A DNA stretch of 64,000 nucleotides, taken from positions 124,001 to 188,000 of the IMG/VR virus record IMGVR_UViG_3300023174_000045, one strand, 5' to 3'. Shown in pieces: positions 4,188 to 46,826 of the stretch. Position 1 is the first letter of the stretch. Every line of letters starts with the position of its first letter. Position numbers and translations under genes: made by a program. The notes under the pieces were generated by a model. It was not told where the DNA came from and did not search any database. It was given only the letters and a program-made list of their open reading frames with translations.

Positions 4188-5125
4188 AGTTAAGCGACTT
4201 AGTTGATTATTTGAATTTGTTAGACAGCGATGCGTTATCGCCGGAATATGCGGTGGCCATGAACAGATTCCAGGCCATTGGCCATACCATTGCAAATCAT
4301 GCAGTGCAGATAGATAATTTCAGTGATGATATCAACAACAAACTGCAACAAGTCATTGACAGTTTTGCTGATGTGCAACAAACTGTGGAAGAACTCAAAT
4401 ACAGTATACGCAGACAAATTGCACAATTAGAACCTGCACAATATCAGCAAAGTCTTGCACTGTATGAAGATGAAATGGGTTATGAAACGTCAGAATACAT
4501 TTTAAACAGACGTCTGGCCATTGACTCTGAAAGTGAAGCATACTTGCGAGCCAGGCTGTTACGATACACAGATTGGCGGGTGCCTGGAATAATCATCAGA
4601 CCAGGGTTAGAAAAGTTTATTGAACATTTGGTGCCATTGGATCCATTGTACGTTGTGGATCAAAATTTAGAATTGCTAGAACCTGCATTAAATCAATTTA
4701 CTCCAGAGTATCGTCGACGACTACGTCCCTATGCTATCGACGATTACACAAACGAAAATGCCATGTGGCAGTTGCCAGACGGTCAATTTGGGTTTGTATT
4801 TGCCTACAACTATTTTAATTTTAAACCCATGCCAGTGTTGCGCAGATACATTGACCAAATTTACGCCAAGCTCAGACCTGGCGGAGTCGCACTGTTCACC
4901 TTCAATGATTGTGATTGGCGGCAAGGAGTAGCGCTTGCAGAAAAAAATTTCATGTGCTACACACCGGGAATCGAAGTTGTATCACATGCAAGTTCATTGG
5001 GATTTGAAATTTTGGACAGATATTGTGGACAGGGCAATCTTGCCTGGTTGGAAATTAAAAAACCCGGCGAAATCGAATCGATTAGGGGTGGTCAGAGCCT
5101 GGCCAAAATAATTGCTATTCAGTAA
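4184..5125 (+). CDS. Putative class I SAM methyltransferase-like protein
   Basis: GQFGFVFAYNYF and KLRPGGVALFT motifs; motif I degenerate. Confidence 0.5.
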   Translation: MKLSDLVDYLNLLDSDALSPEYAVAMNRFQAIGHTIANHAVQIDNFSDDINNKLQQVIDSFADVQQTVEELKYSIRRQIAQLEPAQYQQSLALYEDEMGYETSEYILNRRLAIDSESEAYLRARLLRYTDWRVPGIIIRPGLEKFIEHLVPLDPLYVVDQNLELLEPALNQFTPEYRRRLRPYAIDDYTNENAMWQLPDGQFGFVFAYNYFNFKPMPVLRRYIDQIYAKLRPGGVALFTFNDCDWRQGVALAEKNFMCYTPGIEVVSHASSLGFEILDRYCGQGNLAWLEIKKPGEIESIRGGQSLAKIIAIQ

Positions 5126-7605: not shown

Positions 7606-8102
7606 ACAGAGCAGGACATGATGATGTCAACTTCTTTACAGGAACCGAAGTAGAACGCACACCAGCATTTGGTCGACGCACATTGTTTGTGGTAGGTGTA
7701 CAATCAGTGGACGCTATTGCTGCCAAGTTAGAAAATGTAGACCAACACATCTTTTTTGGTGCCAACCACAGTTTCAATCCTCAAACTCCTGCAGACTGGC
7801 GGACATGGGAAGAAATGATCACACACTTTTTGGACCTTGGATATCTTTGCACTTTGGACATTCCCATCGCCGCAGTGGAAGAATTTAATGATGGTTCATT
7901 GTGTGACTACCGCAACTTTATTCCACAGATTCGAGTAAGTGTGCCGTATACAAAACTGTGGAATTATAATACAATGTTAAAAATAGATGACAAGGACTTT
8001 GACGCTACCAATCCCGGCGTCTGGTGCCACAGTCTACACAGCCTGATGAGCCGTGAGACATTTACGTCGTGGGATGATTACAAAGGTGATAGAGAATTAT
8101 GA
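7602..8102 (+). CDS. Hypothetical protein coupled to DpdA-like gene
   Basis: ATGA overlap, 166 aa. Confidence 0.8.
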   Translation: MNRAGHDDVNFFTGTEVERTPAFGRRTLFVVGVQSVDAIAAKLENVDQHIFFGANHSFNPQTPADWRTWEEMITHFLDLGYLCTLDIPIAAVEEFNDGSLCDYRNFIPQIRVSVPYTKLWNYNTMLKIDDKDFDATNPGVWCHSLHSLMSRETFTSWDDYKGDREL

Positions 8103-8398
8103 AATGGTTTGATAATTGGTTTGCTAACAAAGTTCAAGAGTCTTGGAATCGAACCAGGGCGAACCCATCAACATCAAAAAATGAAATCATGGTCAGTGAA
8201 GATCGAAACAGCATCGGCGCCAGCCGACACAGAATAAACTTCACTGTGTATCGTGCCAATGGTGGCATGATGGTAGAATACAACAGATATGATGAACGCA
8301 AAGATCATCACTCTTGTGAATTGCACATTGTACATCCTGATCAAGACCTTGGTGACGCCTTGGGCAAAATTGTAACATTTGAAAGTTTGAAATCATGA
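8099..8398 (+). CDS. Hypothetical protein
   Basis: ATGA overlaps both sides. Confidence 0.75.
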   Translation: MKWFDNWFANKVQESWNRTRANPSTSKNEIMVSEDRNSIGASRHRINFTVYRANGGMMVEYNRYDERKDHHSCELHIVHPDQDLGDALGKIVTFESLKS

Positions 8399-12862: not shown

Positions 12863-15304
12863 ATGAAGAGAATCGTGCTCTGGATTTCGATGTCTGGGAT
12901 TGTTGTTGCTGTGACCGCCTGTAGCGGCGGCGGCGGTTCGTCAGTCACAGTCAAAAGTGATCCGTACATAAGTACTCCCAATCTTTATGTTAGAACCGAA
13001 GTTCCATACTCGACTCCGGTATTACAGGCTGTGGTTGATCCCTTGGTCAATGTGGTTGACAACGGATATAAATGGGCTGTAGCTGATACGTTTGCCGCAG
13101 ATATTGCCGGCACTGGCGGGCAAGACTTGATCATTGCTGGTCGTATGACACAACCTACTCCAGTGTCTGATTGGGGCAACTTTCGACTCAGTATGTTGAC
13201 CTGGCAAAACAATAAGTTGGTTGATCGAACTGCTCAATGGTTTCCGAACGATACCAATATTATACTAGGGTCTGAACCCAGTGTAAAGTTTGCGGACTTT
13301 TTTAAAACTGGACGCAACGATATGTTTCTGAACACTGGCACCGACATGCAACATTACGGTCCCACTTATTTTTACCGCAACACTGGCACCAGTTTTGAGA
13401 GACAAGTTTTAACCACAGCAAATATTTGGTCACATGATTCAGCCATTGGCGACCTCAACGGTGATGGTTACACTGATATTGCCATCATTGATTATGGTCC
13501 CAACGCTACATTAGCGTTCAACAACAAAGTCAGCGGATTCAATGTGTACACACAAGATCCAACTAACATGCAACTGCACACTGGTAGTAGTGTGGCCATT
13601 GGTGATTTTATGGGCACTGGTCAAGGGCAATTGGTAGTCACAGATGCTCGTGCCAATGTTGGAACAAATCCCACAAAGTTATATTCATGGGCAATTGACT
13701 CAGGAAACAAACTAAATTTCACCGAAGTCAGCACCTTACCTACTCCCAGATTTGAGTTACCAAAATGGGCAGGCCATGGGTTCGCGCCCGGCAGTCATAA
13801 TGTACGGGCAGTGACGTATGATTTCAATGATGACAAAATCCCTGATGTGTTGATTTTTAGTAGACCCGGATTAGGTACTGTCAACTACAAGTACAGTGAG
13901 ATACAGTTTTTAAAGAATGATGGCAAAGGTACATTTTCTGATGTAACAGATACTGTGCTGGTAGGATATGACACCAACACCTATGTTTGTTATAATCCAA
14001 AATTTCTAGATCTCAACGGTGATGGTCGAGAAGACATATTGGTCGGCGGTTCGGACTGGACTGGTGTTAACAACAGCACACAATTTTTGTTGAAAAGTTC
14101 TGATGGCAAATATGTGGCTGCATATCAAAATATCATGACTGATTTTGCCACACAGGTCAACACTATCCAAGGCGCAGAGAATGTGGGCAATACTGTGAAT
14201 CTGCTGAAGGCACCCAATGGCAAACTGTACTTGGTCAGTGCGGTGAGTTTTATCAATCAAGCCAATGATCGACAGTTAGCGATATACATGAGCGAATTAG
14301 GCAGTCAGTCAGTGACAACTGCGCAAACAGCCATTAATTTAATATTGCAAAAATGGCCATACATGACTGTACCACAGGCCAATGCTGTGCTGGCCCAGAC
14401 CAGTGCCAAGTATCTTGGTGGCAATGTAATTGATTACGATGCATTATGGACACCGTCGGGCACACTTAGTTTAACCACTGCCGGTGGTATCAAGTCCATA
14501 TCTGGTTACATCAGTGGAGTGAACTTTGGTTCAACCGAATCAGTGGTAACTGACAACTTAAAACGATCTTTTACTGTGAATCTTGGATCCATGCATGTTG
14601 ATCGGCCAAGTGCGTTCAGTCAAAGTGTGGGATTCACCGAACAAGACACGTTGACCAGTCAAGCCGAATATTTAATCAACGGTCCGGTTGCTAATTTTGG
14701 TGACATAAGAGTAGGATCTAACTACAACACTCAAACTTCAAGTACCAGTCAATTGCAATATACCCTGGGCATACCCAACTACTATCAAAAGGGCAATTTT
14801 TCATTAGGAGCACAATACACACACTTGAATTCCAATCCCTGGATTAATTTTACCGGAGCATGGGGTGAAATCACTGGTAGCAGTATATTAGACAATGTAT
14901 TGACTTATCGCAAAAATGGATTTTCTGCACAGGCCAGTTTGATGTATGTGGCCACCAGCATTGACCCTGGCTTGGTTACCAAAGTCAGTCCTATGTTGGC
15001 TGCCTGGACAGAGGTTGGATACAAAACTGATCCTGAATCACCAATGGGAAATACCGGAGTGTACTTTGGCATCAAACCGGTAACATTGAGTGGTCATGTA
15101 AGTGCTAAAATACCAACAAGTGTTGACATGTCAGGCAATATTGTGTATACTAACAAGAAGTTAACTGTACAGGATCAGGTCATCGGCTATGCAAGAATTA
15201 CATATACCAATCAACTGAGTCGACACAGTCAATTTAAAGTTTCTGCAATGGGCACCGCAACAGGTGAGTACAAAATGGTAAATGAACTTAAACTTCAATT
15301 TTGA
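12863..15304 (+). CDS. FG-GAP/VCBS-repeat lipoprotein with probable C-terminal beta-barrel
   Basis: Lipobox VTAC; repeats GDLNGDGYTDI, DFNDDKIPDV, DLNGDGREDI; C-terminal Phe. Confidence 0.75.
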   Translation: MKRIVLWISMSGIVVAVTACSGGGGSSVTVKSDPYISTPNLYVRTEVPYSTPVLQAVVDPLVNVVDNGYKWAVADTFAADIAGTGGQDLIIAGRMTQPTPVSDWGNFRLSMLTWQNNKLVDRTAQWFPNDTNIILGSEPSVKFADFFKTGRNDMFLNTGTDMQHYGPTYFYRNTGTSFERQVLTTANIWSHDSAIGDLNGDGYTDIAIIDYGPNATLAFNNKVSGFNVYTQDPTNMQLHTGSSVAIGDFMGTGQGQLVVTDARANVGTNPTKLYSWAIDSGNKLNFTEVSTLPTPRFELPKWAGHGFAPGSHNVRAVTYDFNDDKIPDVLIFSRPGLGTVNYKYSEIQFLKNDGKGTFSDVTDTVLVGYDTNTYVCYNPKFLDLNGDGREDILVGGSDWTGVNNSTQFLLKSSDGKYVAAYQNIMTDFATQVNTIQGAENVGNTVNLLKAPNGKLYLVSAVSFINQANDRQLAIYMSELGSQSVTTAQTAINLILQKWPYMTVPQANAVLAQTSAKYLGGNVIDYDALWTPSGTLSLTTAGGIKSISGYISGVNFGSTESVVTDNLKRSFTVNLGSMHVDRPSAFSQSVGFTEQDTLTSQAEYLINGPVANFGDIRVGSNYNTQTSSTSQLQYTLGIPNYYQKGNFSLGAQYTHLNSNPWINFTGAWGEITGSSILDNVLTYRKNGFSAQASLMYVATSIDPGLVTKVSPMLAAWTEVGYKTDPESPMGNTGVYFGIKPVTLSGHVSAKIPTSVDMSGNIVYTNKKLTVQDQVIGYARITYTNQLSRHSQFKVSAMGTATGEYKMVNELKLQF

Positions 15305-38539: not shown

Positions 38540-38930
38540 TTATTGCTGTATGAAGCCGAGAGAAAAGTGTTCTGGACGGGGGTGCGAATCCCCCCAGGTC
38601 CACCATAAAGAAATTTGATGAAACCAAAAAAAGTAAAACAGTATTTTGTTATAGTAGACAAAGATGACACAGTAAAAAGAGTGTGTTGGGCACCTTTACT
38701 GTGGGATATTCCTAACCTGGGATATCGTTTTACAGGATTTGACGGTGGTATTCCAAAGTTTCTTTATGTCGGGCCTGCATAGTTTCGACAGGGCAACAAG
38801 TAACAGAGTGGACAGCACGGTAGGCGATGACCGTTAATCAAGCAAAAAACGTAAATGCAAACGACGAACAGTTCGCTTTGGCAGCCTAAACACTGCCTAG
38901 GGTAGGAAATACCTCGTAACAGAAACAACC
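38540..38930 (+). ncRNA. ssrA: Circularly permuted (two-piece) tmRNA, tag ANDEQFALAA
   Basis: T arm and CCA end at 38605 precede 5' GGGCCTG at 38771; G3:U70; tag 38857-38889; ends approximate. Confidence 0.92.
38618..38782 (+). CDS. Possible 54-aa ORF in tmRNA intervening segment
   Basis: Open ATG-TAG, no clear SD. Confidence 0.3.
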   Translation: MKPKKVKQYFVIVDKDDTVKRVCWAPLLWDIPNLGYRFTGFDGGIPKFLYVGPA

Positions 38931-39367: not shown

Positions 39368-39400
39368 AAAAACCCGCCACCTAGGCGGGTTTTTCTTTTT
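39368..39400 (+). terminator. Attenuator 1 terminator
   Basis: AAAAACCCGCC-ACCTA-GGCGGGTTTTT plus T tract. Confidence 0.88.
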
Positions 39401-39404
39401 GTGC

Positions 39405-39548
39405 TAGACCAATAATGGGATAGGTGTTATACTAGAGACTAGTTAGGAAAGCAACACAGCAAAGTTTGCAAAGACCCTACAAAGCGAAGGGATTTTGCAA
39501 AACAAGTTGACCAGAATAGCACAAGGTGTTATACTAGAGACTAGTTAG
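39405..39548 (+). promoter_or_regulatory. Tandem promoters sharing a 25-nt repeat
   Basis: TAGACC/TTGACC-17-TATACT; AGGTGTTATACTAGAGACTAGTTAG at 39422 and 39524. Confidence 0.75.
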
Positions 39549-39731
39549 AAAGCAAGGCGGTCCTCGAATGTAAGAACCCACGCAGAAATGCAAAAAGGGT
39601 TGGAACCAAGGGACACGAAGCGAGTTTGTAGACTCGGCCTCCGCAGGTTAAAACAGCACAGTCGATCGAGACTAGTTGAAAGGTTCGTTAAAATTTTGAT
39701 TGTCATGTAGTCCCTGTCTAGTTACAGGGTA

Positions 39732-39963
39732 CTATATGTAAACACATTAGGGTTACCTAGCCGTTAGGGGTGAACGAAGGCCAGACAGCGCAAGCCGGAT
39801 ACCCATGAAGCAGGAGGGTTCTACAGTATGACGAGACACCATCGAGTCAAAGGGCAAGAACTATCAAACTCCAGGAAGGCGACGGAACAACTGGGCCCGT
39901 AATGAGGTCTTGACGCAAGTTGGTGATGCGTGTCAAGAACTTCCCTAATGTATTTTCATATAG
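39732..39963 (+). ncRNA. Helix-closed ncRNA A (~230 nt)
   Basis: CTATATG..CACATTAGGG pairs with CCCTAATGT..CATATAG; internal hairpins. Confidence 0.7.
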
Positions 39964-39966
39964 CAT

Positions 39967-40042
39967 GCACGGTTCGTCTATCGGTTTAGGACACTAGCCT
40001 TTCACGTTAGTAAGACGGGTTCGATTCCCGTACCGTGTACCA
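39967..40042 (+). tRNA. tRNA-Glu(TTC)
   Basis: Cloverleaf, CCA. Confidence 0.92.
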
Positions 40043-40045
40043 AGT

Positions 40046-40185
40046 TGTCGAGGAACTCCATCCTTAAACGGGGGGCAACACTGGGCCTACGAAGTGGGTG
40101 ATTGCAAAAACCAGAAAGAGCAACGTTGACATTGACGAAAAAATGTCTTACGATGAATAAACGTCCTAATAGGGGCTTGTCGACA
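40046..40185 (+). ncRNA. Candidate ncRNA B
   Basis: TGTCGA/TCGACA closing helix, imperfect extension. Confidence 0.45.
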
Positions 40186-40208
40186 CACAAGTAGCCTGTA
40201 CTAATTTT

Positions 40209-40294
40209 GGAGATGTGGCAGAGTGGTTGATTGCACCAGACTGTAAATCTGGCCCCTAAAAAGCGCGGTGGTTCGAATCCATCCGTCTCCACCA
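40209..40294 (+). tRNA. tRNA-Tyr(GTA)
   Basis: Cloverleaf with variable arm, CCA. Confidence 0.92.
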
Positions 40295-40303
40295 ATTTTG
40301 TTT

Positions 40304-40455
40304 TTATAGTCAAGCATCGATACAGGTATCGTGTAAGGACGCTTACGCTATTCGGGTCCAACCGGCCGGGAACGGATCCTAATATAACTGCTATCGGCTG
40401 TTGCACTCTTAGCGGAGGACGCATAAATTGAGCATCTCTCGGTGCTTGACTATAA
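40304..40455 (+). ncRNA. Helix-closed ncRNA C
   Basis: 17-bp closing helix, three internal hairpins. Confidence 0.7.
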
Positions 40456-40461
40456 GAATTT

Positions 40462-40537
40462 GGTCCTAAAGTGTTCATGGACGCACGACGGCTTGTCACG
40501 CCGTAAGAGTGGGGATCGTTACCCCCTAGGACCGCCA
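40462..40537 (+). tRNA. tRNA-Asp(GTC)
   Basis: Cloverleaf, atypical T loop ATCGTTA, CCA. Confidence 0.88.
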
Positions 40538-40543
40538 AGTTTT

Positions 40544-40622
40544 GCAGATAATGGATAGGGCGGGCATCTATTGGTGCCTAATACTAGTTGCCGCAGAGGT
40601 TCGAGTCCTCTGGTCTGCACCA
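40544..40622 (+). ncRNA. tRNA-like RNA 1 (acceptor and T arm, no canonical D/anticodon arms)
   Basis: GCAGAT/GTCTGC, A73-CCA, AGAGG-TTCGAGT-CCTCT. Confidence 0.65.
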
Positions 40623-40628
40623 AGTTTT

Positions 40629-40727
40629 TGCGTTATAGTATAGTGGCCAGTACGCAAGGGCCCACACAATGAAAATTGTATGGTGGGAATTGCCAGTGTA
40701 GCGATGGTTCGATTCCATCTAACGCAA
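40629..40727 (+). ncRNA. tRNA-like RNA 2 (anticodon arm replaced by GAAA-capped long hairpin)
   Basis: 7-bp acceptor, D arm with GG, T arm; no encoded CCA. Confidence 0.7.
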
Positions 40728-40734
40728 TATCATT

Positions 40735-40952
40735 TTTGAGAGTGTCAGCAAGCGCAGTCACGCTATCTAGGTAAGTTCGAACTACCGAAATAGTAAAAGG
40801 GGACGGGTTCAACTCCCGGGGGATCGGAAGATCCCTGCAGATTGGTTGCTAACTGGACAGGTACCCAAGTGATATCCATCGCGAGCGAGGTCAGGCTAGG
40901 CGGCCGGTAGGTCCTGAATAAATCTACGATAAAAGTGACGTAGGCTCTCAAA
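40735..40952 (+). ncRNA. YrlA-like RNA with circularly permuted tRNA domain
   Basis: T arm, then GGAA-closed acceptor helix, then D arm (40804-40854); 9-bp terminal helix. Confidence 0.65.
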
Positions 40953-40960
40953 TTCAATCG

Positions 40961-41037
40961 GCGACCATAGCTCATTTGGATAGAGCACTGTGCTACGAAC
41001 GCAGGGGTGGGAGGTTCGAATCCTTCTGGTCGCGCCA
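40961..41037 (+). tRNA. tRNA-Arg(ACG)
   Basis: Cloverleaf, CCA. Confidence 0.92.
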
Positions 41038-41132
41038 TGTAAAAACACTCTAAACTGGACGCAGGATCTGAGAAGGTTGAACGTAGGTTGATCACTACTA
41101 GTAAGCTGGAGATCAAGAGTGTTTCTACATGG
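41035..41132 (+). ncRNA. Inter-tRNA helix element
   Basis: CCATGTAAAAACACTCT / AGAGTGTTTCTACATGG. Confidence 0.7.
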
Positions 41133-41207
41133 TGCGTGTCGTCAAGCGGTCAAGACCTCGGATTGTGATTCCGATATGCGTGGGTTCGAATCCCATCATG
41201 CACCCCA
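41131..41207 (+). tRNA. tRNA-His(GTG)
   Basis: Encoded G-1:C73, CCA. Confidence 0.92.
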
Positions 41208-41230
41208 ACACAAGATAAATAAAAGAATAA

Positions 41231-41305
41231 CGCGGGGTAGAGAAGCAGTAACTCGTTAGGCTCATAACCTAAAGATCGGCGGTGCGAATCCGTCCTCCGC
41301 AACCA
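41231..41305 (+). tRNA. tRNA-fMet(CAT)
   Basis: C1:A72 mismatch; only two G-C pairs next to anticodon loop. Confidence 0.85.
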
Positions 41306-41321
41306 AATTTTAGGAGTTTTT

Positions 41322-41729
41322 ATGATAGCAATTAACACGGTAATAAAACCGATGGTGGGCCACGAACAAGAAGCAATTGACAATTTCTATACTTTTCATA
41401 AATCACCACACCCGGAGTTATTTGAATTTTTTAAAGAGTTTGTGGATCAAAATTTAATTTTGAATACGATGTTTTGGCAGCCATATGATGACCGAAATCT
41501 CAATCATTTGCTTAGATACTATGCTGTCAATATGGAAAATGCCGAAATTTTTCAAGAAAAATTATTGAGTGAGTCTGCAGATTTTTCAATGAAAAAATTC
41601 TGGGATCAAAATAAATTTGACTATTCAATTGAGTTGACAGAAATAAACTTTGATGAAGAATTTCCACAATACTATGTTGTAGATAATGAGTCTGGTGGAG
41701 TTTGGGGAGACGTTTGGCCATTGCTTTGA
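41322..41729 (+). CDS. Hypothetical protein, paralogue A
   Basis: SD AGGAG; FEFFKEFVDQNLILN. Confidence 0.75.
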   Translation: MIAINTVIKPMVGHEQEAIDNFYTFHKSPHPELFEFFKEFVDQNLILNTMFWQPYDDRNLNHLLRYYAVNMENAEIFQEKLLSESADFSMKKFWDQNKFDYSIELTEINFDEEFPQYYVVDNESGGVWGDVWPLL

Positions 41730-42208
41730 TATGCGTTGAAGTTTATTGCAGGCCAACAAAAAAATGTGATTTTGTTGCTGTTCGATCGTGGACAGAATTT
41801 ATATGTGCTGAGTATCCAGCGATGTTTGACTTCTTTCAAGAGTGCATTGATCAAAATTTAATTGTGAACAAATTTGCATTAAATGTAGATGGAGTTACAG
41901 ACTTATGGAAATACTACTCCTCCAATCAAACTCAAGCTGAAATTTTTCTTGAAAAATTTAAAAATATGCCTTTGAATTTTTCTAAAGAGAAGTTTTCAAT
42001 GAAAGAATTTTGGAATCGTTATGAGTTTGAAATTGATATGTCACTCAAAGAAATAGATTTTGACAACGAAAAAGAATTATTTGATTTGATAAACAAAGAC
42101 ACCGGTGAGATGTGGGCTACTACATTTCCATTAGGTGGACCGCTTGATAATTATTACCAGTTAGAAAAACATTTTCAGCCACAGTGGTTGACAACAAAAG
42201 ATAAATAA
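41726..42208 (+). CDS. Hypothetical protein, paralogue B (probable TTG start)
   Basis: FDFFQECIDQNLIVN aligns to A; start chosen by alignment. Confidence 0.65.
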   Translation: MICVEVYCRPTKKCDFVAVRSWTEFICAEYPAMFDFFQECIDQNLIVNKFALNVDGVTDLWKYYSSNQTQAEIFLEKFKNMPLNFSKEKFSMKEFWNRYEFEIDMSLKEIDFDNEKELFDLINKDTGEMWATTFPLGGPLDNYYQLEKHFQPQWLTTKDK

Positions 42209-42216
42209 ACTATAAT
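42188..42216 (+). promoter_or_regulatory. Promoter of attenuator 2
   Basis: TTGACA-17-TATAAT exact consensus. Confidence 0.85.
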
Positions 42217-42223
42217 AGGAACT

Positions 42224-42334
42224 ATGATGAAACAACAATTCTGTTCAATGTCCAAGCCCCAAACACTCCAGGCAACAACCTGGCTGTTGGCCAATGGCTC
42301 ATTCAACAGCATTCCAGGAGAACCGGGGTTCTGA
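42224..42334 (+). CDS. Leaderless 36-aa leader peptide (attenuator 2)
   Basis: MMKQQFCSMSKPQTLQATTWLLANGSFNSIPGEPGF. Confidence 0.7.
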   Translation: MMKQQFCSMSKPQTLQATTWLLANGSFNSIPGEPGF

Positions 42335-42361
42335 TTAGACTATATTCGTATACCTAACAAG

Positions 42362-42396
42362 AACCCCGGAACTAAACACTCCGGGGTTTTTCATTT
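42362..42396 (+). terminator. Attenuator 2 terminator
   Basis: AACCCCGGA/TCCGGGGTT 9 bp plus T tract. Confidence 0.85.
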
Positions 42397-42399
42397 AGT

Positions 42400-42578
42400 G
42401 CAACGGCAACGCGAGCCGGTATCACTCTAAACTACAAATGTGGGCGGCCCGGAGGATGGGAAGCTGGTGGTGAAAACGCCAGTGGTAAAATTCCGGAGTA
42501 TCGAAGCATTCTCGGGCCTTGGGGCAAGTGGGTTCATCCATGAAGAGTGCTTCGATACACACATTGGCAACAGTGTGT
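42400..42578 (+). ncRNA. Structured leader / candidate ncRNA D
   Basis: 15-bp helix 42498-42512/42544-42558 plus nested hairpins. Confidence 0.55.
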
Positions 42579-42588
42579 TGAAATTTAT

Positions 42589-42662
42589 TCCGGTGTAGTA
42601 TAATGGCAGTGCGGCGGTCTCCAAAACCGTTAGTGGGAGTTCGATTCTCTCCACCGGAGCCA
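42589..42662 (+). tRNA. tRNA-Trp(CCA)
   Basis: Cloverleaf, CCA. Confidence 0.92.
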
Positions 42663-42669
42663 AGTTAAT

Positions 42670-42744
42670 GGGGGGTTGGTGCTAACGGGAACACATGTGC
42701 TTTGCAAGCATGAGTTAAGGGTTCGATTCCCTTACCCTCCACCA
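42670..42744 (+). tRNA. tRNA-Ala(TGC)
   Basis: G3:U70, CCA. Confidence 0.9.
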
Positions 42745-42766
42745 TAGTCAGTATAAGTATTCACAA

Positions 42767-42856
42767 GGTGCGGTCCTATAATGGTATTAGAGCAGATTGC
42801 TAATCTGTCGCTCGGCGTAATCCGGGTTCTGAGTTCGAGTCTCAGTCGCACCGCCA
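42767..42856 (+). tRNA. tRNA-Ser(GCT)
   Basis: Long variable arm, G73, CCA. Confidence 0.9.
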
Positions 42857-42863
42857 AGAACAT

Positions 42864-42939
42864 TCCCTCGTAGCACAGCGGTAGTTGCGCTTCACTGTTA
42901 ATGAAGATGTCGTTCGTTCGATCCGAACCGAGGGAGCCA
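42864..42939 (+). tRNA. tRNA-Asn(GTT)
   Basis: Cloverleaf, CCA. Confidence 0.92.
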
Positions 42940-42957
42940 AATAAAAAAGGAAACGCA

Positions 42958-43140
42958 ATGTCAGCATTTAACACACACAACGACCCATTGAAACACAAGA
43001 CTGGTAAGCCCAGACTTGGTCCAATGAATGTAGAACAGTTGACCCGACTGTTGGAGAGTGCCAGACCCAAACATCGTGCAAAGATTCAACGTGCCTTGGA
43101 CTACAAGAAAACAATTCAAAAGATCATAGCAAAGGCTTGA
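42958..43140 (+). CDS. Basic 60-aa hypothetical protein
   Basis: SD AAGGA. Confidence 0.65.
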   Translation: MSAFNTHNDPLKHKTGKPRLGPMNVEQLTRLLESARPKHRAKIQRALDYKKTIQKIIAKA

Positions 43141-43145
43141 TATCC

Positions 43146-43219
43146 GCCCTACTAGTATAATGGCATTACACTGGTTTTGTAATCCTGTGATGGCAGTTCG
43201 ATTCTGTCGTGGGGCACCA
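43146..43219 (+). tRNA. tRNA-Thr(TGT)
   Basis: Cloverleaf; two U:U mismatches in anticodon stem. Confidence 0.82.
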
Positions 43220-43271
43220 AATTTTTACAAAGGAGATCTGTCATGAGTAGTGACAAGAGTGACAAACCTAT

Positions 43272-43346
43272 GGGGGTATAACTTAACGGCTAAAGTAGTG
43301 GGCTTTTAACCCATTAATCAGAGTTCGATTCTCTGTGCCCCTACCA
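43272..43346 (+). tRNA. tRNA-Lys(TTT)
   Basis: Cloverleaf, CCA. Confidence 0.9.
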
Positions 43347-43420
43347 TATAAAAACACATTAACAGCGTCGTACCGGTCGCCGGACTTAGGTTGAATTCCT
43401 AATAGTGTGTTTCTATATGG
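43344..43420 (+). ncRNA. Inter-tRNA helix element
   Basis: CCATATAAAAACACATT / AGTGTGTTTCTATATGG. Confidence 0.7.
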
Positions 43421-43494
43421 TAATATAGCATAGTGGCTAATGCAGTTGCTTCATACGCAACCCACCGTTGGTTCGAGTCCAACTATTACCACCA
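43419..43494 (+). tRNA. tRNA-Met(CAT), elongator-like
   Basis: Cloverleaf, CCA. Confidence 0.85.
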
Positions 43495-44227: not shown

Positions 44228-44473
44228 ATGTGGGAATATGTTTTAACGTTTTTTGCTGTGTTGTTCACAGATATTTTTTATACCTACTACCTAAAAGCAG
44301 TACAAGATGAACGTGTGATGGCTGCCAGTGTTTGGGCCACTGTTGTATTTTTGGTAGCCTGCGTAGCAGTGATCAACTACACAACAAATTACTGGTTGCT
44401 GATTCCTGCAGGGCTAGGTGCGTTTTGTGGCACTTGGATAGGCATGAGATTACGGGCTCAACAAAAGCAGTAG
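44228..44473 (+). CDS. Small multi-TM protein (DUF2179-like)
   Basis: Three hydrophobic helices, GAFCGTWIG. Confidence 0.6.
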   Translation: MWEYVLTFFAVLFTDIFYTYYLKAVQDERVMAASVWATVVFLVACVAVINYTTNYWLLIPAGLGAFCGTWIGMRLRAQQKQ

Positions 44474-44493
44474 TGATCGTCTATAAATATAGC

Positions 44494-44889
44494 ATGTCCA
44501 TTTACAATCAGTATTTTTGCCAACATTGTCGTTCTGCGTATTCTAGATCACAAGAAAAATTAACTCCAGGATATTGCAGTTTGAATTGTTCTGTGGTTGA
44601 GTCAAAAAGACAGTCGCAAAAAACTTTCAAAGAACTAACTTTGGAAGACAGAATCAAAAATCGACCTGGTGGCACATATCTTGAGTACAACAGTGGTATT
44701 CCTCCTGAACTGGCTGTAGAAACAACCCCAGTCAAAAGAAGAGAGTACAAATGTGTTTGTTGCGGCATTGCTGATTACAATGGCCGTCCGTTGAAACTAC
44801 AACTGTTTCACCATGACGGTAATCAAAAGAATTTTGACCCAGACAATGTTAAATTTTTGTGTCCAAATTGTTTGAGCCAACATCAATAA
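44494..44889 (+). CDS. HNH-family protein, possibly degenerate
   Basis: CVCC, LQLFHHDGN..N..FLCPNCL; TATAAATA upstream. Confidence 0.7.
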   Translation: MSIYNQYFCQHCRSAYSRSQEKLTPGYCSLNCSVVESKRQSQKTFKELTLEDRIKNRPGGTYLEYNSGIPPELAVETTPVKRREYKCVCCGIADYNGRPLKLQLFHHDGNQKNFDPDNVKFLCPNCLSQHQ

Positions 44890-46330: not shown

Positions 46331-46355
46331 ACTATAAATAACCTTGAAAGTGTAT

Positions 46356-46826
46356 ATGAAAAAACTTGATATAGAACAAGTGGCCGAATTTATCCGGACT
46401 CAAAGTCCAGAAACACGCATCTATCTTGGATGCGACAGTGAACGCATCAAAATTGATGGTGCATGGTGGGCTGACTATGTGTTGGCCATTGTGGTTCACA
46501 TCAACGGCAACAACGGTTGCAAACTGTTTGGTGAAGTACATCGTGAACGTGTGTGGGATCAAAAAGCATCCAAGCCGGCCATGCGGCTCATGACTGAAGT
46601 TTACAAAGTTTCAGAACTGTACTTGAAACTGGCAGAAGTGTTGGAAGGGCGCGATGTTGAAGTTCACTTGGACATCAACCCTGACGAAATGCACGGATCA
46701 AGTTGTGTTGTCAGCCAAGCCATCGGTTACATCAAAGGCACATGTAATGTGATTCCTTTTGTGAAGCCTGAGGCTTTTGCAGCCAGCTATGCTGCCGACA
46801 GATTCAAAGGCTTGCGGGCGGCGTAG
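46356..46826 (+). CDS. RNase H-like YkuK/DUF458 family protein
   Basis: IYLGCDS, RLMTEV, EVHLDIN, KPEAFAASYAAD. Confidence 0.8.
   Translation: MKKLDIEQVAEFIRTQSPETRIYLGCDSERIKIDGAWWADYVLAIVVHINGNNGCKLFGEVHRERVWDQKASKPAMRLMTEVYKVSELYLKLAEVLEGRDVEVHLDINPDEMHGSSCVVSQAIGYIKGTCNVIPFVKPEAFAASYAADRFKGLRAA

What the first reader, a model, noticed from the sequence alone, without database searches (positions are those of the whole stretch)
39732..43420. One conserved closing helix used three times to frame unrelated RNA cargo between tRNAs
Seen: CYATRT-AAA(A)-CACWYT ... RGTGT-TTYY-AYATRG closes inserts at 39732-39963 (~190 nt cargo), 41035-41132 and 43344-43420. In the latter two the helix begins with the CCA of one tRNA and ends with the first GG of the next, and has the same single A:C mismatch. 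The tmRNA IVS has the same CCA-to-5'-end geometry. Inference: a dedicated processing or protein-binding handle that releases or stabilises cargo RNAs, or times tRNA maturation; a modular RNA-cassette system.
Basis: partly seen in the sequence, partly recalled or inferred. Interest (0 to 1): 0.7.

Follow-up and report, generated by a model that had tools for sequence, protein, structure and literature searches.

The report
Swappable RNA cassettes in phage tRNA arrays
A large freshwater phage carries, between its tRNA genes, small structured RNAs all closed by the same 18-base-pair stem; hundreds of related phage contigs share the stem but put about 190 different RNAs inside it, a family found neither in Rfam nor in four literature searches.

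Summary
All three helices exist at the stated coordinates. Copies 2 and 3 run from a tRNA's CCA to the first Gs of the next tRNA, each with one A:C mismatch.

The helix is widespread. I catalogued 353 elements:
- All lie on the tRNA strand.
- Seventeen base pairs are predicted, 11 with compensatory changes.
- G:U far outnumbers A:C, which points to a sense-strand RNA helix.
- The elements enclose 187 unrelated cargo families.

Cargo and position recombine freely. The same cargo follows different tRNAs, and one position (tRNA-Lys-UUU to tRNA-Met) holds 24 different cargos. In an unbiased sample, 56% of tRNA-Lys(UUU) genes and 37% of tRNA-Glu(UUC) genes carry such a CCA-anchored hairpin.

No Rfam family and no paper matched. 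They also lack RNase III, Ro/TROVE, integrase, reverse transcriptase and RtcB.

Best reading (inferred): small RNAs cut out of tRNA precursors by host enzymes, with the stem acting as a processing and stability handle and the arms allowing cassette exchange. No RNA ends could be mapped.

The parts
39732..39752 (+). Copy 1, 5' arm (CUAUAUGUAAACACAUUAGGG); variant handle, not preceded by a tRNA
   Evidence: same variant arm with 170-300 nt cargos in other contigs
39753..39942 (+). Copy 1 cargo: conserved ~190-nt structured RNA of unknown family
   Evidence: 89-93% identical in 4 other contigs, with some compensatory pairs; no Rfam match
39943..39963 (+). Copy 1, 3' arm; ends 3 nt before tRNA-Glu(UUC) (39967-40042)
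41035..41051 (+). Copy 2, 5' arm; its first three bases are the CCA of tRNA-Arg(ACG) (40961-41037)
41052..41115 (+). Copy 2 cargo (64 nt); homologous cargos at 78-84% identity in 8 loci
41116..41132 (+). Copy 2, 3' arm; its last two Gs are G-1/G+1 of tRNA-His (to 41207)
   Evidence: G-1 assignment is my reading of the acceptor stem
43344..43361 (+). Copy 3, 5' arm (canonical CCAUAUAAAAACACAUUA); starts with the CCA of tRNA-Lys(UUU) (43272-43346)
   Evidence: the commonest context in other contigs
43362..43402 (+). Copy 3 cargo (41 nt): a 5' hairpin plus a T-arm-like hairpin (UUAGG-UUGAAUU-CCUAA) abutting the 3' arm, as in a tRNA
   Evidence: same cargo with different arm variants in L134 and L051, near-identical copy in L120
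43403..43420 (+). Copy 3, 3' arm; its last GG are G1G2 of tRNA-Met (43419-43494)
40292..40463 (+). Same geometry, different handle: the CCA of tRNA-Tyr pairs with UGG at the start of tRNA-Asp. Inner 15-bp stem 40301-40320 / 40439-40458 encloses a ~118-nt RNA
   Evidence: (pair I6); region conserved in 14 loci
38603..38770 (+). Intervening segment of the permuted tmRNA, closed by a CCA-anchored AU-rich helix of similar style
   Evidence: (pair I5)
42188..42216 (+). Consensus sigma-70-like promoter upstream of the tRNA run that holds copy 3. Similar sites at 39507-39535 and 40126-40154 lie upstream of copies 1 and 2
   Evidence: consensus matches only
46344..46826 (+). YkuK-like RNase H-fold protein (PF04308): frequent array neighbour, tested as candidate partner and not required

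Best explanation
The three helices belong to a large, phage-specific family of small structured RNAs embedded in polycistronic tRNA transcripts.

Anatomy (shown):
- Each element is an 18-bp stem, consensus 5'-CCAUAU(A/U)(A/G)AA(A/G)CACAUU ... AGUGUGUUUCUAUAUGG-3'.
- The outer part is AU-rich. Position 8 is usually non-Watson-Crick and position 16 is usually U:G.
- The stem closes a variable cargo of about 40-100 nt, with a subclass of 170-300 nt.
- The 5' arm normally begins with the CCA of the preceding tRNA, most often tRNA-Lys(UUU) or tRNA-Glu(UUC).
- The 3' arm often ends in the first Gs of the next tRNA.

Proposed mechanism (inferred, not shown):
1. The cassette is transcribed together with the tRNAs.
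2. Host enzymes separate it from them. RNase P acts at the 5' end of the downstream tRNA. A double-strand-specific cut (RNase III type) or breathing of the weak AU-rich outer stem, followed by exonuclease trimming, acts at the CCA side.
3. The inner, GC-containing stem stays with the cargo and protects its ends, giving a stable small RNA.
4. Because the arms are shared, recombination within them exchanges cargos between positions and between co-infecting phages. This produces the observed library of cargos.

What the cargos do is unknown. About a tenth look like tRNA elbow or minihelix mimics.
For: Family and conservation:
- At least 119 viral contigs carry exact arms.
- 256 elements were found in those loci.
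- 97 more were found in 80 loci chosen by a protein alone; only 12 of these 97 are canonical.

Structure:
- RNAalifold predicts 17 pairs, 11 with double compensatory changes.
- The minimum-free-energy fold forms at least 15 of the 18 closing pairs in 194 of 202 elements.

Sense-strand RNA:
- All elements lie on the tRNA strand, and no exact antisense copy exists.
- Excluding position 8, G:U pairs outnumber A:C pairs by about 257 to 32, and by about 130 to 14 in the unbiased set.

Within tRNA transcripts:
- 208 of 353 elements start exactly at a tRNA's CCA, and 100 overlap the next tRNA by 1-2 nt.
- Promoter-like sites lie upstream.
- RNA-library contigs read from tRNA-Lys into the 5' arm and across copy 2.

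Cargo is functional and modular:
- There are 187 cargo clusters.
- 67 clusters occur after tRNA-Lys(UUU), and 24 at the single Lys-to-Met position.
- 10 of the top 30 clusters follow more than one tRNA species.
- One cargo family can carry up to 7 arm variants.
- Compensatory changes occur inside cargo hairpins.
- T-arm-like hairpins occur in 22 of 217 cargos against 0.9 expected, mostly close to the 3' arm.

Host enzymes rather than a phage partner:
- Five helix-bearing genomes, three of them 100% complete, encode no RNase III, integrase, reverse transcriptase or RtcB.
- Only two of the five have the YkuK-like gene and only one has an RNA ligase.
- The helix occurs in two lineages whose DNA polymerases are only 29-36% identical.
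Against: - No RNA 5' or 3' ends were mapped. The RNA runs are assembled contigs that break where cargos diverge, and they may contain DNA.
- RNase III involvement is pure inference.
- An 18-bp stem with a mismatch is short for a canonical RNase III site.
- Near-invariant base pairs (A3:U, U4:A, A9:U, A10:U, C12:G, A13:U, U17:A) beside freely covarying ones hint at sequence-specific recognition that a simple processing stem does not need. My scan's mismatch limit inflates this invariance.
- Cargo folding energies are only slightly better than shuffles, with mean z of -0.5.
- The link to tRNA-Lys and tRNA-Glu may reflect inherited gene order rather than function.
Confidence: 0.5

Rival explanations
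1. The stem is a dedicated protein-binding handle. A conserved host or phage protein recognises the AU-rich helix with its position-8 mismatch and forms a ribonucleoprotein, with the variable cargo as effector or tether module, as in Ro60/Y RNA.
For: Several base pairs are nearly invariant while neighbours covary, and a non-Watson-Crick pair at position 8 persists as A:C, C:A or U:U. Exact arm identity holds across phage lineages with 29-36% identical DNA polymerase. About 10% of cargos carry tRNA-like T-arms, as YrlA does. A DUF2828+DUF7788 protein is encoded in 15 of the helix loci.
Against: - No TROVE/Ro protein is encoded in the own genome, and the Y-RNA motif GNCGAA is absent from the arms.
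- DUF2828 is absent from the own genome, and that protein has no sequence match in the PDB.
- The YkuK-like protein is absent from two complete helix-bearing genomes.
- Divergent handles with the same geometry exist.
- Position 8 is fully paired in about 40% of unbiased elements.
- No protein family shared by all helix-bearing genomes was found among those tested.
Confidence: 0.2
2. The helix is mainly a cis-acting device for the upstream tRNA. By pairing the CCA of tRNA-Lys(UUU) or tRNA-Glu(UUC) it delays or orders maturation, or shields the 3' end from host nucleases. The cargo is mostly a tolerated loop.
For: - The 5' junction with a tRNA CCA is the most constant feature, seen in 208 of 353 elements.
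- The 3' arm keeps UGG to pair with CCA even when no tRNA follows.
- When no tRNA precedes, both sides change together to CUA...UAG.
- 27 of 48 tRNA-Lys(UUU) genes and 17 of 46 tRNA-Glu(UUC) genes carry a CCA-anchored hairpin, against 9% or fewer of any other tRNA species.
Against: - Cargo families are conserved across contigs whose arms have diverged, and they show compensatory changes.
- Elements also occur without any upstream tRNA, and in tandem.
- A loop under no selection would not keep T-arm-like hairpins far above chance.
Confidence: 0.17
3. The arms are DNA-level sites, either terminal inverted repeats of a miniature mobile element or attC-like folded recombination sites, and the cargo is passenger DNA.
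For: Identical cassettes sit in different flanks, with identity ending exactly at the helix ends (cluster 2). HNH endonuclease genes lie in many arrays, including 44332-44889.
Against: - Orientation is strictly that of the tRNAs, with no antisense copy.
- G:U greatly exceeds A:C on the sense strand.
- There is no consistent target-site duplication.
- No tyrosine recombinase or reverse transcriptase occurs in five helix-bearing genomes.
- The terminal CCA and GG belong to functional tRNAs.
- Cargos are structured and conserved.
Confidence: 0.06

Closest known systems
Stable RNAs encoded inside the phage T4 tRNA cluster (species 1 and 2, rnaC/rnaD) (from general knowledge)
   Same: Small non-tRNA RNAs that sit among phage tRNA genes, are co-transcribed with them and released by host tRNA-processing enzymes. 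Their function is unknown.
   Different: The T4 RNAs are two fixed genes. No shared handle with a large, exchangeable cargo repertoire is known for them. I could not test sequence relatedness because no model was available, and Rfam gave no match.
sRNAs derived from tRNA operon spacers in E. coli (3'ETS-leuZ, metZWV internal spacers) (from general knowledge)
   Same: Functional RNAs cut from transcribed spacers next to tRNAs.
   Different: Those are single-stranded sponge sequences released by RNase E. They are host-encoded and have no conserved closing stem or modular cargo.
RNase III processing stems (rRNA operons, T7 early mRNA sites, T4 tRNA cluster leader) (from general knowledge)
   Same: Flanking sequences pair to frame a stable RNA inside a polycistronic precursor. 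Internal mismatches are known to steer cleavage.
   Different: Cleavage here is untested. The stem is only 18 bp, and its sequence is conserved far beyond what known RNase III sites require.
Y RNAs / bacterial YrlA (PMC4201824)
   Same: A terminal stem made by the 5' and 3' ends serves as the constant module. The rest is a variable or tRNA-like module, and homologues are present in phages.
   Different: There is no Ro60/TROVE gene, no GNCGAA motif and no Rfam match. Only about 10% of cargos have a T-arm, and the elements are anchored to tRNA CCA ends.
Engineered polycistronic tRNA-guide RNA arrays and tRNA-scaffold RNA expression (from general knowledge)
   Same: Works alike in principle. Cargo RNAs placed between tRNAs would be released by RNase P and 3'-end processing, and terminal helices would stabilise them.
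   Different: Those are man-made. This is a natural phage arrangement with its own conserved handle.
Integron attC sites / MITEs
   Same: Conserved imperfect inverted repeats flank a variable centre, and the unit appears in different contexts.
   Different: These genomes lack an integrase and a target-site duplication. The elements show only one orientation and an RNA-type G:U bias, and the repeats enclose the cargo rather than follow a gene.

Membership tests
Y RNA / YrlA | Ro60/Rsr (TROVE) gene nearby, within about 4 kb on the same strand | tested here: not met
   No PF05731 match in the own 225-kb contig, while the control genomes rang. The contig is only about 65% complete.
Y RNA / YrlA | Ro-binding motif GNCGAAN0-1G / GGUCCGA in the 5' strand of the terminal stem (PMC4201824) | tested here: not met
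   The arm consensus CCAUAUAAAAACACAUU has no such motif. No Y_RNA or YrlA model matched at E<=5.
Y RNA / YrlA | tRNA-like T and D arms in the variable module | tested here: inconclusive
   T-arm-like hairpins occur in 22 of 217 cargos, including copy 3. Most cargos lack one.
RNase III processing stem | Double-stranded RNA of about two helical turns formed by sequences flanking a stable RNA in a precursor | tested here: met
   An 18-bp covarying stem, often extended into the cargo, lies inside tRNA transcription units.
RNase III processing stem | Staggered cleavage by RNase III in vivo or in vitro | not testable with these tools
   Only assembled RNA-library contigs were available, so no ends could be mapped. 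The phages encode no RNase III, so the enzyme would be the host's.
Integron attC cassette | IntI-type tyrosine recombinase and R''/R' core sites (RYYYAAC / GTTRRRY) | tested here: not met
   No PF00589 match in five helix-bearing genomes, while all controls rang. The arm sequence does not fit the core sites.
MITE / TIR transposon | Insertion in either orientation with a target-site duplication | tested here: not met
   129 canonical copies are sense and none is antisense. The flanks show no constant duplication.
Retron ncRNA | Adjacent reverse transcriptase | tested here: not met
   No PF00078 match in five helix-bearing genomes.
Any Rfam 15 family | Covariance-model match | tested here: not met
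   Only tRNA and tmRNA models match in the window region and in five cassette-rich loci.
tRNA-operon-embedded stable RNA (T4 species 1/2 kind) | Non-tRNA structured RNA gene inside a phage tRNA cluster, on the same strand, flush with tRNA ends | tested here: met
tRNA-operon-embedded stable RNA (T4 species 1/2 kind) | Accumulates as a discrete processed RNA | not testable with these tools
   No read-level RNA data were available.

The most novel reading that the evidence does not exclude
Large freshwater phages maintain and trade a library of hundreds of small structured RNAs through one universal plug: a CCA-anchored stem placed just after tRNA-Lys(UUU) and tRNA-Glu(UUC). On this reading the cargos are fast-turning effector RNAs, such as tRNA mimics or decoys aimed at host tRNA-targeting defences or tRNA-handling enzymes. 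That would make this an RNA counterpart of a gene-cassette system.
Probability: 0.25. Interest if true: 0.9.

Novelty: new variant of a known kind. Interest (0 to 1): 0.75.

Why it matters
Phage tRNA arrays are usually read as codon-supply or anti-defence tRNA sets, and their spacers are ignored. Here the spacers hold a very diverse set of conserved structured RNAs: at least 187 families in about 200 contigs. All are delivered through one shared stem, and they are concentrated after two tRNAs (Lys-UUU and Glu-UUC).

If the RNAs are released as predicted, three things follow:
- It would be a natural version of the tRNA-flanked RNA expression trick used in engineering.
- It would be a new source of stable RNA scaffolds.
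- It would offer a way in to what small RNAs do in large-phage infections.

The idea is directly testable by end mapping. A cultured freshwater phage (Synechococcus phage BUCT-ZZ01) carries related hairpins.

Tried and rejected
- **YkuK-like protein as obligate partner.** It is the commonest neighbour, in 25 of 120 loci. It is absent from two complete helix-bearing genomes, and it is present in cultured phages (DLP6, Vibrio nt-1) whose sampled arrays have no helix.
- **Paralogues 41322 and 41702.** They have no Pfam or PHROG hit and homologues in only 2 loci.
- **Ro/Y-RNA idea.** No TROVE gene was found. DUF2828+DUF7788 occurs in 15 loci but not in the own genome, and that protein has no PDB sequence match.
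- **Other phage-encoded enzymes.** RNase III, integrase, reverse transcriptase and RtcB are absent from the helix-bearing genomes tested. An RNA ligase occurs in only one of them.
- **Host origin.** Only 2 short freshwater MAG contigs matched among 185,579 species. Both are near-identical to parts of this phage.
- **Cargo as antisense guide to the phage's own genome.** No complementarity beyond chance was found.
- **Anticodon-loop mimicry of tRNA-Lys.** CUUUUA is not enriched; only T-arm words are.
- **RNA evidence.** Two rounds of metatranscriptome contigs gave presence and read-through but no ends.
- **Close relatives among cultured phages.** A DNA search found only tRNA matches.
- **Literature.** Four searches found no description of the element.
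- **Scanning error.** A first fuzzy scan with 12-nt cores slipped register on the ATAT repeat. It was replaced by a 14-nt anchored scan.

Full report
**Setting**

The window is bases 124001-188000 of a single 225,080-bp IMG/VR virus contig. The contig has 44.8% GC, is linear, and CheckV estimates it as about 65% complete. DNA runs that hold it are lake, river and other freshwater metagenomes. The window carries a family-B DNA polymerase, 34 tRNA genes and a permuted tmRNA, all on the + strand. Several sigma-70-like promoter matches lie inside the array.

**The observation**

- Copy 2 (41035-41051 / 41116-41132) begins with the CCA of tRNA-Arg(ACG). It ends with G41131/G41132, which I read as G-1/G+1 of tRNA-His.
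- Copy 3 (43344-43361 / 43403-43420) begins with the CCA of tRNA-Lys(UUU) and ends with G1G2 of tRNA-Met.
- Both have one A:C mismatch at helix position 8.
- Copy 1 (39732-39752 / 39943-39963) is a variant. It has two compensatory changes and a U:U at position 8, encloses 190 nt, and ends 3 nt before tRNA-Glu.

No other copy exists in the contig. RNAfold closes each with the helix.

**The helix is a widespread phage element**

- The same pattern hit only 2 short MAG contigs among one genome each of 185,579 prokaryote species. Both are near-identical to pieces of this phage.
- The 119 loci hold 2015 tRNA genes in 1.07 Mb, so they are all tRNA arrays.
- A scan allowing variation found 256 elements in these loci plus the window, 129 of them with canonical arms.

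To remove the bias of searching with the helix itself, I fetched 80 loci using only a neighbouring protein, the YkuK-like protein. These loci hold 1482 tRNAs on the protein's strand. Fifty of them carry 97 elements, and only 12 of the 97 are canonical. The sequence therefore drifts, but it does so by paired changes.

**It is a sense-strand RNA helix**

- RNAalifold on 70 diverse elements predicts 17 pairs (7 + 10, skipping position 8). Eleven of them show double compensatory changes.
- Positions 1-18 pair in nearly all of the 217 unique elements.
- Position 8 is A:C in 145, G:C in 23, A:U in 21 and U:U in 13. Position 16 is U:G in 134.
- Leaving position 8 aside, G:U pairs outnumber A:C pairs by about 257 to 32 on the tRNA strand. 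In the unbiased set the ratio is about 130 to 14. These would be mismatches on the other strand.
- All tRNAs in each of the first 119 loci lie on one strand, the scan of those loci was run on that strand, and none of them holds an exact antisense-form copy on it.

These facts argue for selection on the transcript and against a DNA element that inserts either way round.

**Cargo**

- The 353 catalogued elements fall into 187 cargo clusters, 116 of them singletons.
- The 118 elements after tRNA-Lys(UUU) carry 67 different clusters. The 36 elements in the single Lys-to-Met position carry 24.
- Ten of the 30 largest clusters follow more than one tRNA species, and one cargo family can have up to seven arm variants.
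- The copy 3 cargo recurs in L134 with different arm bases at positions 7-8.
- Cargos keep hairpins through compensatory changes.
- The copy 1 cargo is a conserved ~190-nt RNA found in four other contigs.
- The only enriched words in cargos are T-arm words.
- Twenty-two of 217 cargos have a T-arm-like hairpin against 0.9 expected. It lies mostly near the 3' arm (16 of 22 within 16 nt of it; 13 at 3-4 or 11 nt), as a T-arm abuts the acceptor stem in a tRNA. Copy 3 is one of these.
- No Rfam family other than tRNA and tmRNA matches here or in five cassette-rich loci.

**Context**

- 208 of 353 elements start exactly at a tRNA's CCA. One hundred overlap the next tRNA by 1-2 nt, and 62 more end within 10 nt of it.
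- When no tRNA precedes, positions 1-3 and their partners change together (CUA...UAG). Pairing of the CCA is therefore itself selected.
- In the unbiased loci, a CCA-anchored hairpin with at least 15 of 16 pairs follows 61 of 1459 tRNAs, against 2 in a control.
- By tRNA species this is 27 of 48 tRNA-Lys(UUU), 17 of 46 tRNA-Glu(UUC), 4 of 51 tRNA-Gln(UUG) and 9% or fewer of any other. The loci are related phages, so the nominal p-value is not independent evidence.
- Some of these hairpins use quite different arm sequences with the same geometry.
- The window's tRNA-Tyr to tRNA-Asp spacer (40292-40463) is one such case. The tmRNA intervening segment is closed in a similar style.

**Partners tested**

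- The YkuK-like RNase H-fold protein is the commonest neighbour. PMC3985635 groups this family with RNase H1 but gives it no assigned function.
- It is missing from two 100%-complete helix-bearing genomes of 364 and 352 kb. It occurs in cultured phages whose sampled arrays lack the helix.
- Helix-bearing genomes encode no RNase III, tyrosine recombinase, reverse transcriptase or RtcB. Only one has an RNA ligase.
- The own contig has no TROVE or DUF2828 protein.
- The helix occurs in two lineages whose DNA polymerases share only 29-36% identity with each other's type.

This points to host enzymes, or to no dedicated protein at all.

**Mechanism**

Shown: a covarying sense-strand stem, anchored on tRNA ends, framing conserved but interchangeable structured cargos.

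Inferred:
1. The cassette is co-transcribed with the tRNAs.
2. RNase P frees its 3' side.
3. A double-strand cut, or melting of the weak outer stem (nine consecutive A/U positions including the mismatch), followed by exonuclease trimming, frees the CCA.
4. The inner CAC/GUG-containing stem stays with the cargo as a protective cap.
5. Shared arms give the homology for cassette exchange.

The rivals are a protein handle, a device that mainly governs tRNA-Lys/Glu maturation, and a DNA-level element. They are weighed in their own sections of this report.

RNA-library contigs show the region and read-through from tRNA-Lys into the 5' arm. However, the assemblies break where cargos diverge, and no ends can be read.

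**Comparison and novelty**

In kind, this resembles the stable RNAs of the T4 tRNA cluster and spacer-derived sRNAs. In logic, it resembles rRNA processing stems and engineered tRNA-flanked RNA arrays. It fails the tested defining features of Y RNAs, integron attC sites, MITEs and retrons. I found no description in four literature searches and no Rfam family. The constant handle with a large exchangeable cargo set is the new part.

**Limits**

- The element counts come from my own scanner, which allows at most 4 mismatches per arm and requires at least 12 of 14 pairs. This inflates apparent sequence invariance and misses divergent handles.
- The contigs are related, so counts are not independent events.
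- Function is inferred.

Noticed in passing
window 40735-40955: A conserved ~220-nt structured RNA with its own closing helix (UUUGAGAGU...GGCUCUCAAA, showing compensatory AG/UA changes) is present in 24 loci. It has very high depth in two freshwater metatranscriptomes (up to about 11,700 against tens for its neighbours). No Rfam match.
   Followed up: partly
window 42395-42588, 40295-40461 and 39547-39700: Further inter-tRNA non-coding regions are conserved in 28, 14 and 5 loci respectively. The array holds several other unannotated structured RNAs. By contrast, 40043-40208 had no match in any locus.
   Followed up: partly
window 40629-40727: A 99-nt sequence scores as a tRNA in Rfam (43 bits, full model) but is missed by ARAGORN. 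It appears to carry an insertion of about 27 nt, possibly an intron. No homologue in the fetched loci.
   Followed up: no
window 40544-40622: ARAGORN calls a 79-nt tRNA with anticodon CUA (labelled Pyl), which would be an amber-suppressor-type tRNA. The cultured phage DLP6 also has a tRNA-Sup-CTA annotated in its array. Possible stop-codon read-through late in infection.
   Followed up: no
loci L122-L201 (unbiased set); window 43272-43346 and 39967-40042: CCA-anchored hairpins concentrate after tRNA-Lys(UUU) (56%) and tRNA-Glu(UUC) (37%), with some after tRNA-Gln(UUG). From general knowledge, these three tRNAs share the 2-thiouridine wobble modification and include known targets of anticodon nucleases. 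The pattern may instead be inherited gene order.
   Followed up: partly
L203 (Synechococcus phage BUCT-ZZ01, ON615601.1) 2520-2626, 4561-4698, 8045-8182, 13978-14100: A cultured freshwater phage of S. elongatus PCC 7942 carries related hairpins (for example CCATATTAAAGCATGC...GCATGCTTTAATATGG). They are not flush with called tRNAs, and one lies under an annotated hypothetical CDS. This is a possible experimental system.
   Followed up: partly
window 39405-39445 and 39507-39547: Two near-identical promoter-like modules (GGTGTTATACTAGAGACTAGTTAG after a -35 box) lie 100 nt apart, just downstream of a strong terminator-like hairpin at 39368-39394.
   Followed up: no
window 41322-41729 and 41702-42208: Two adjacent paralogous ORFs (135 and 168 aa) inside the array have no Pfam or PHROG match and homologues in only 2 other loci. 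An HNH endonuclease gene sits at 44332-44889.
   Followed up: partly
L120 (Planktophila MAG contig) and L121 (Polynucleobacter MAG contig): Short contigs binned into two different freshwater bacterial MAGs are 96-99% identical to parts of this phage's tRNA array. They are probably phage fragments mis-binned and are not reliable host evidence.
   Followed up: partly
loci L049 10016-11437 and 14 others: A 473-aa DUF2828+DUF7788 protein is encoded in 15 of the helix loci but not in this contig. Its fold and any RNA-binding role were not examined beyond a negative PDB sequence search.
   Followed up: partly
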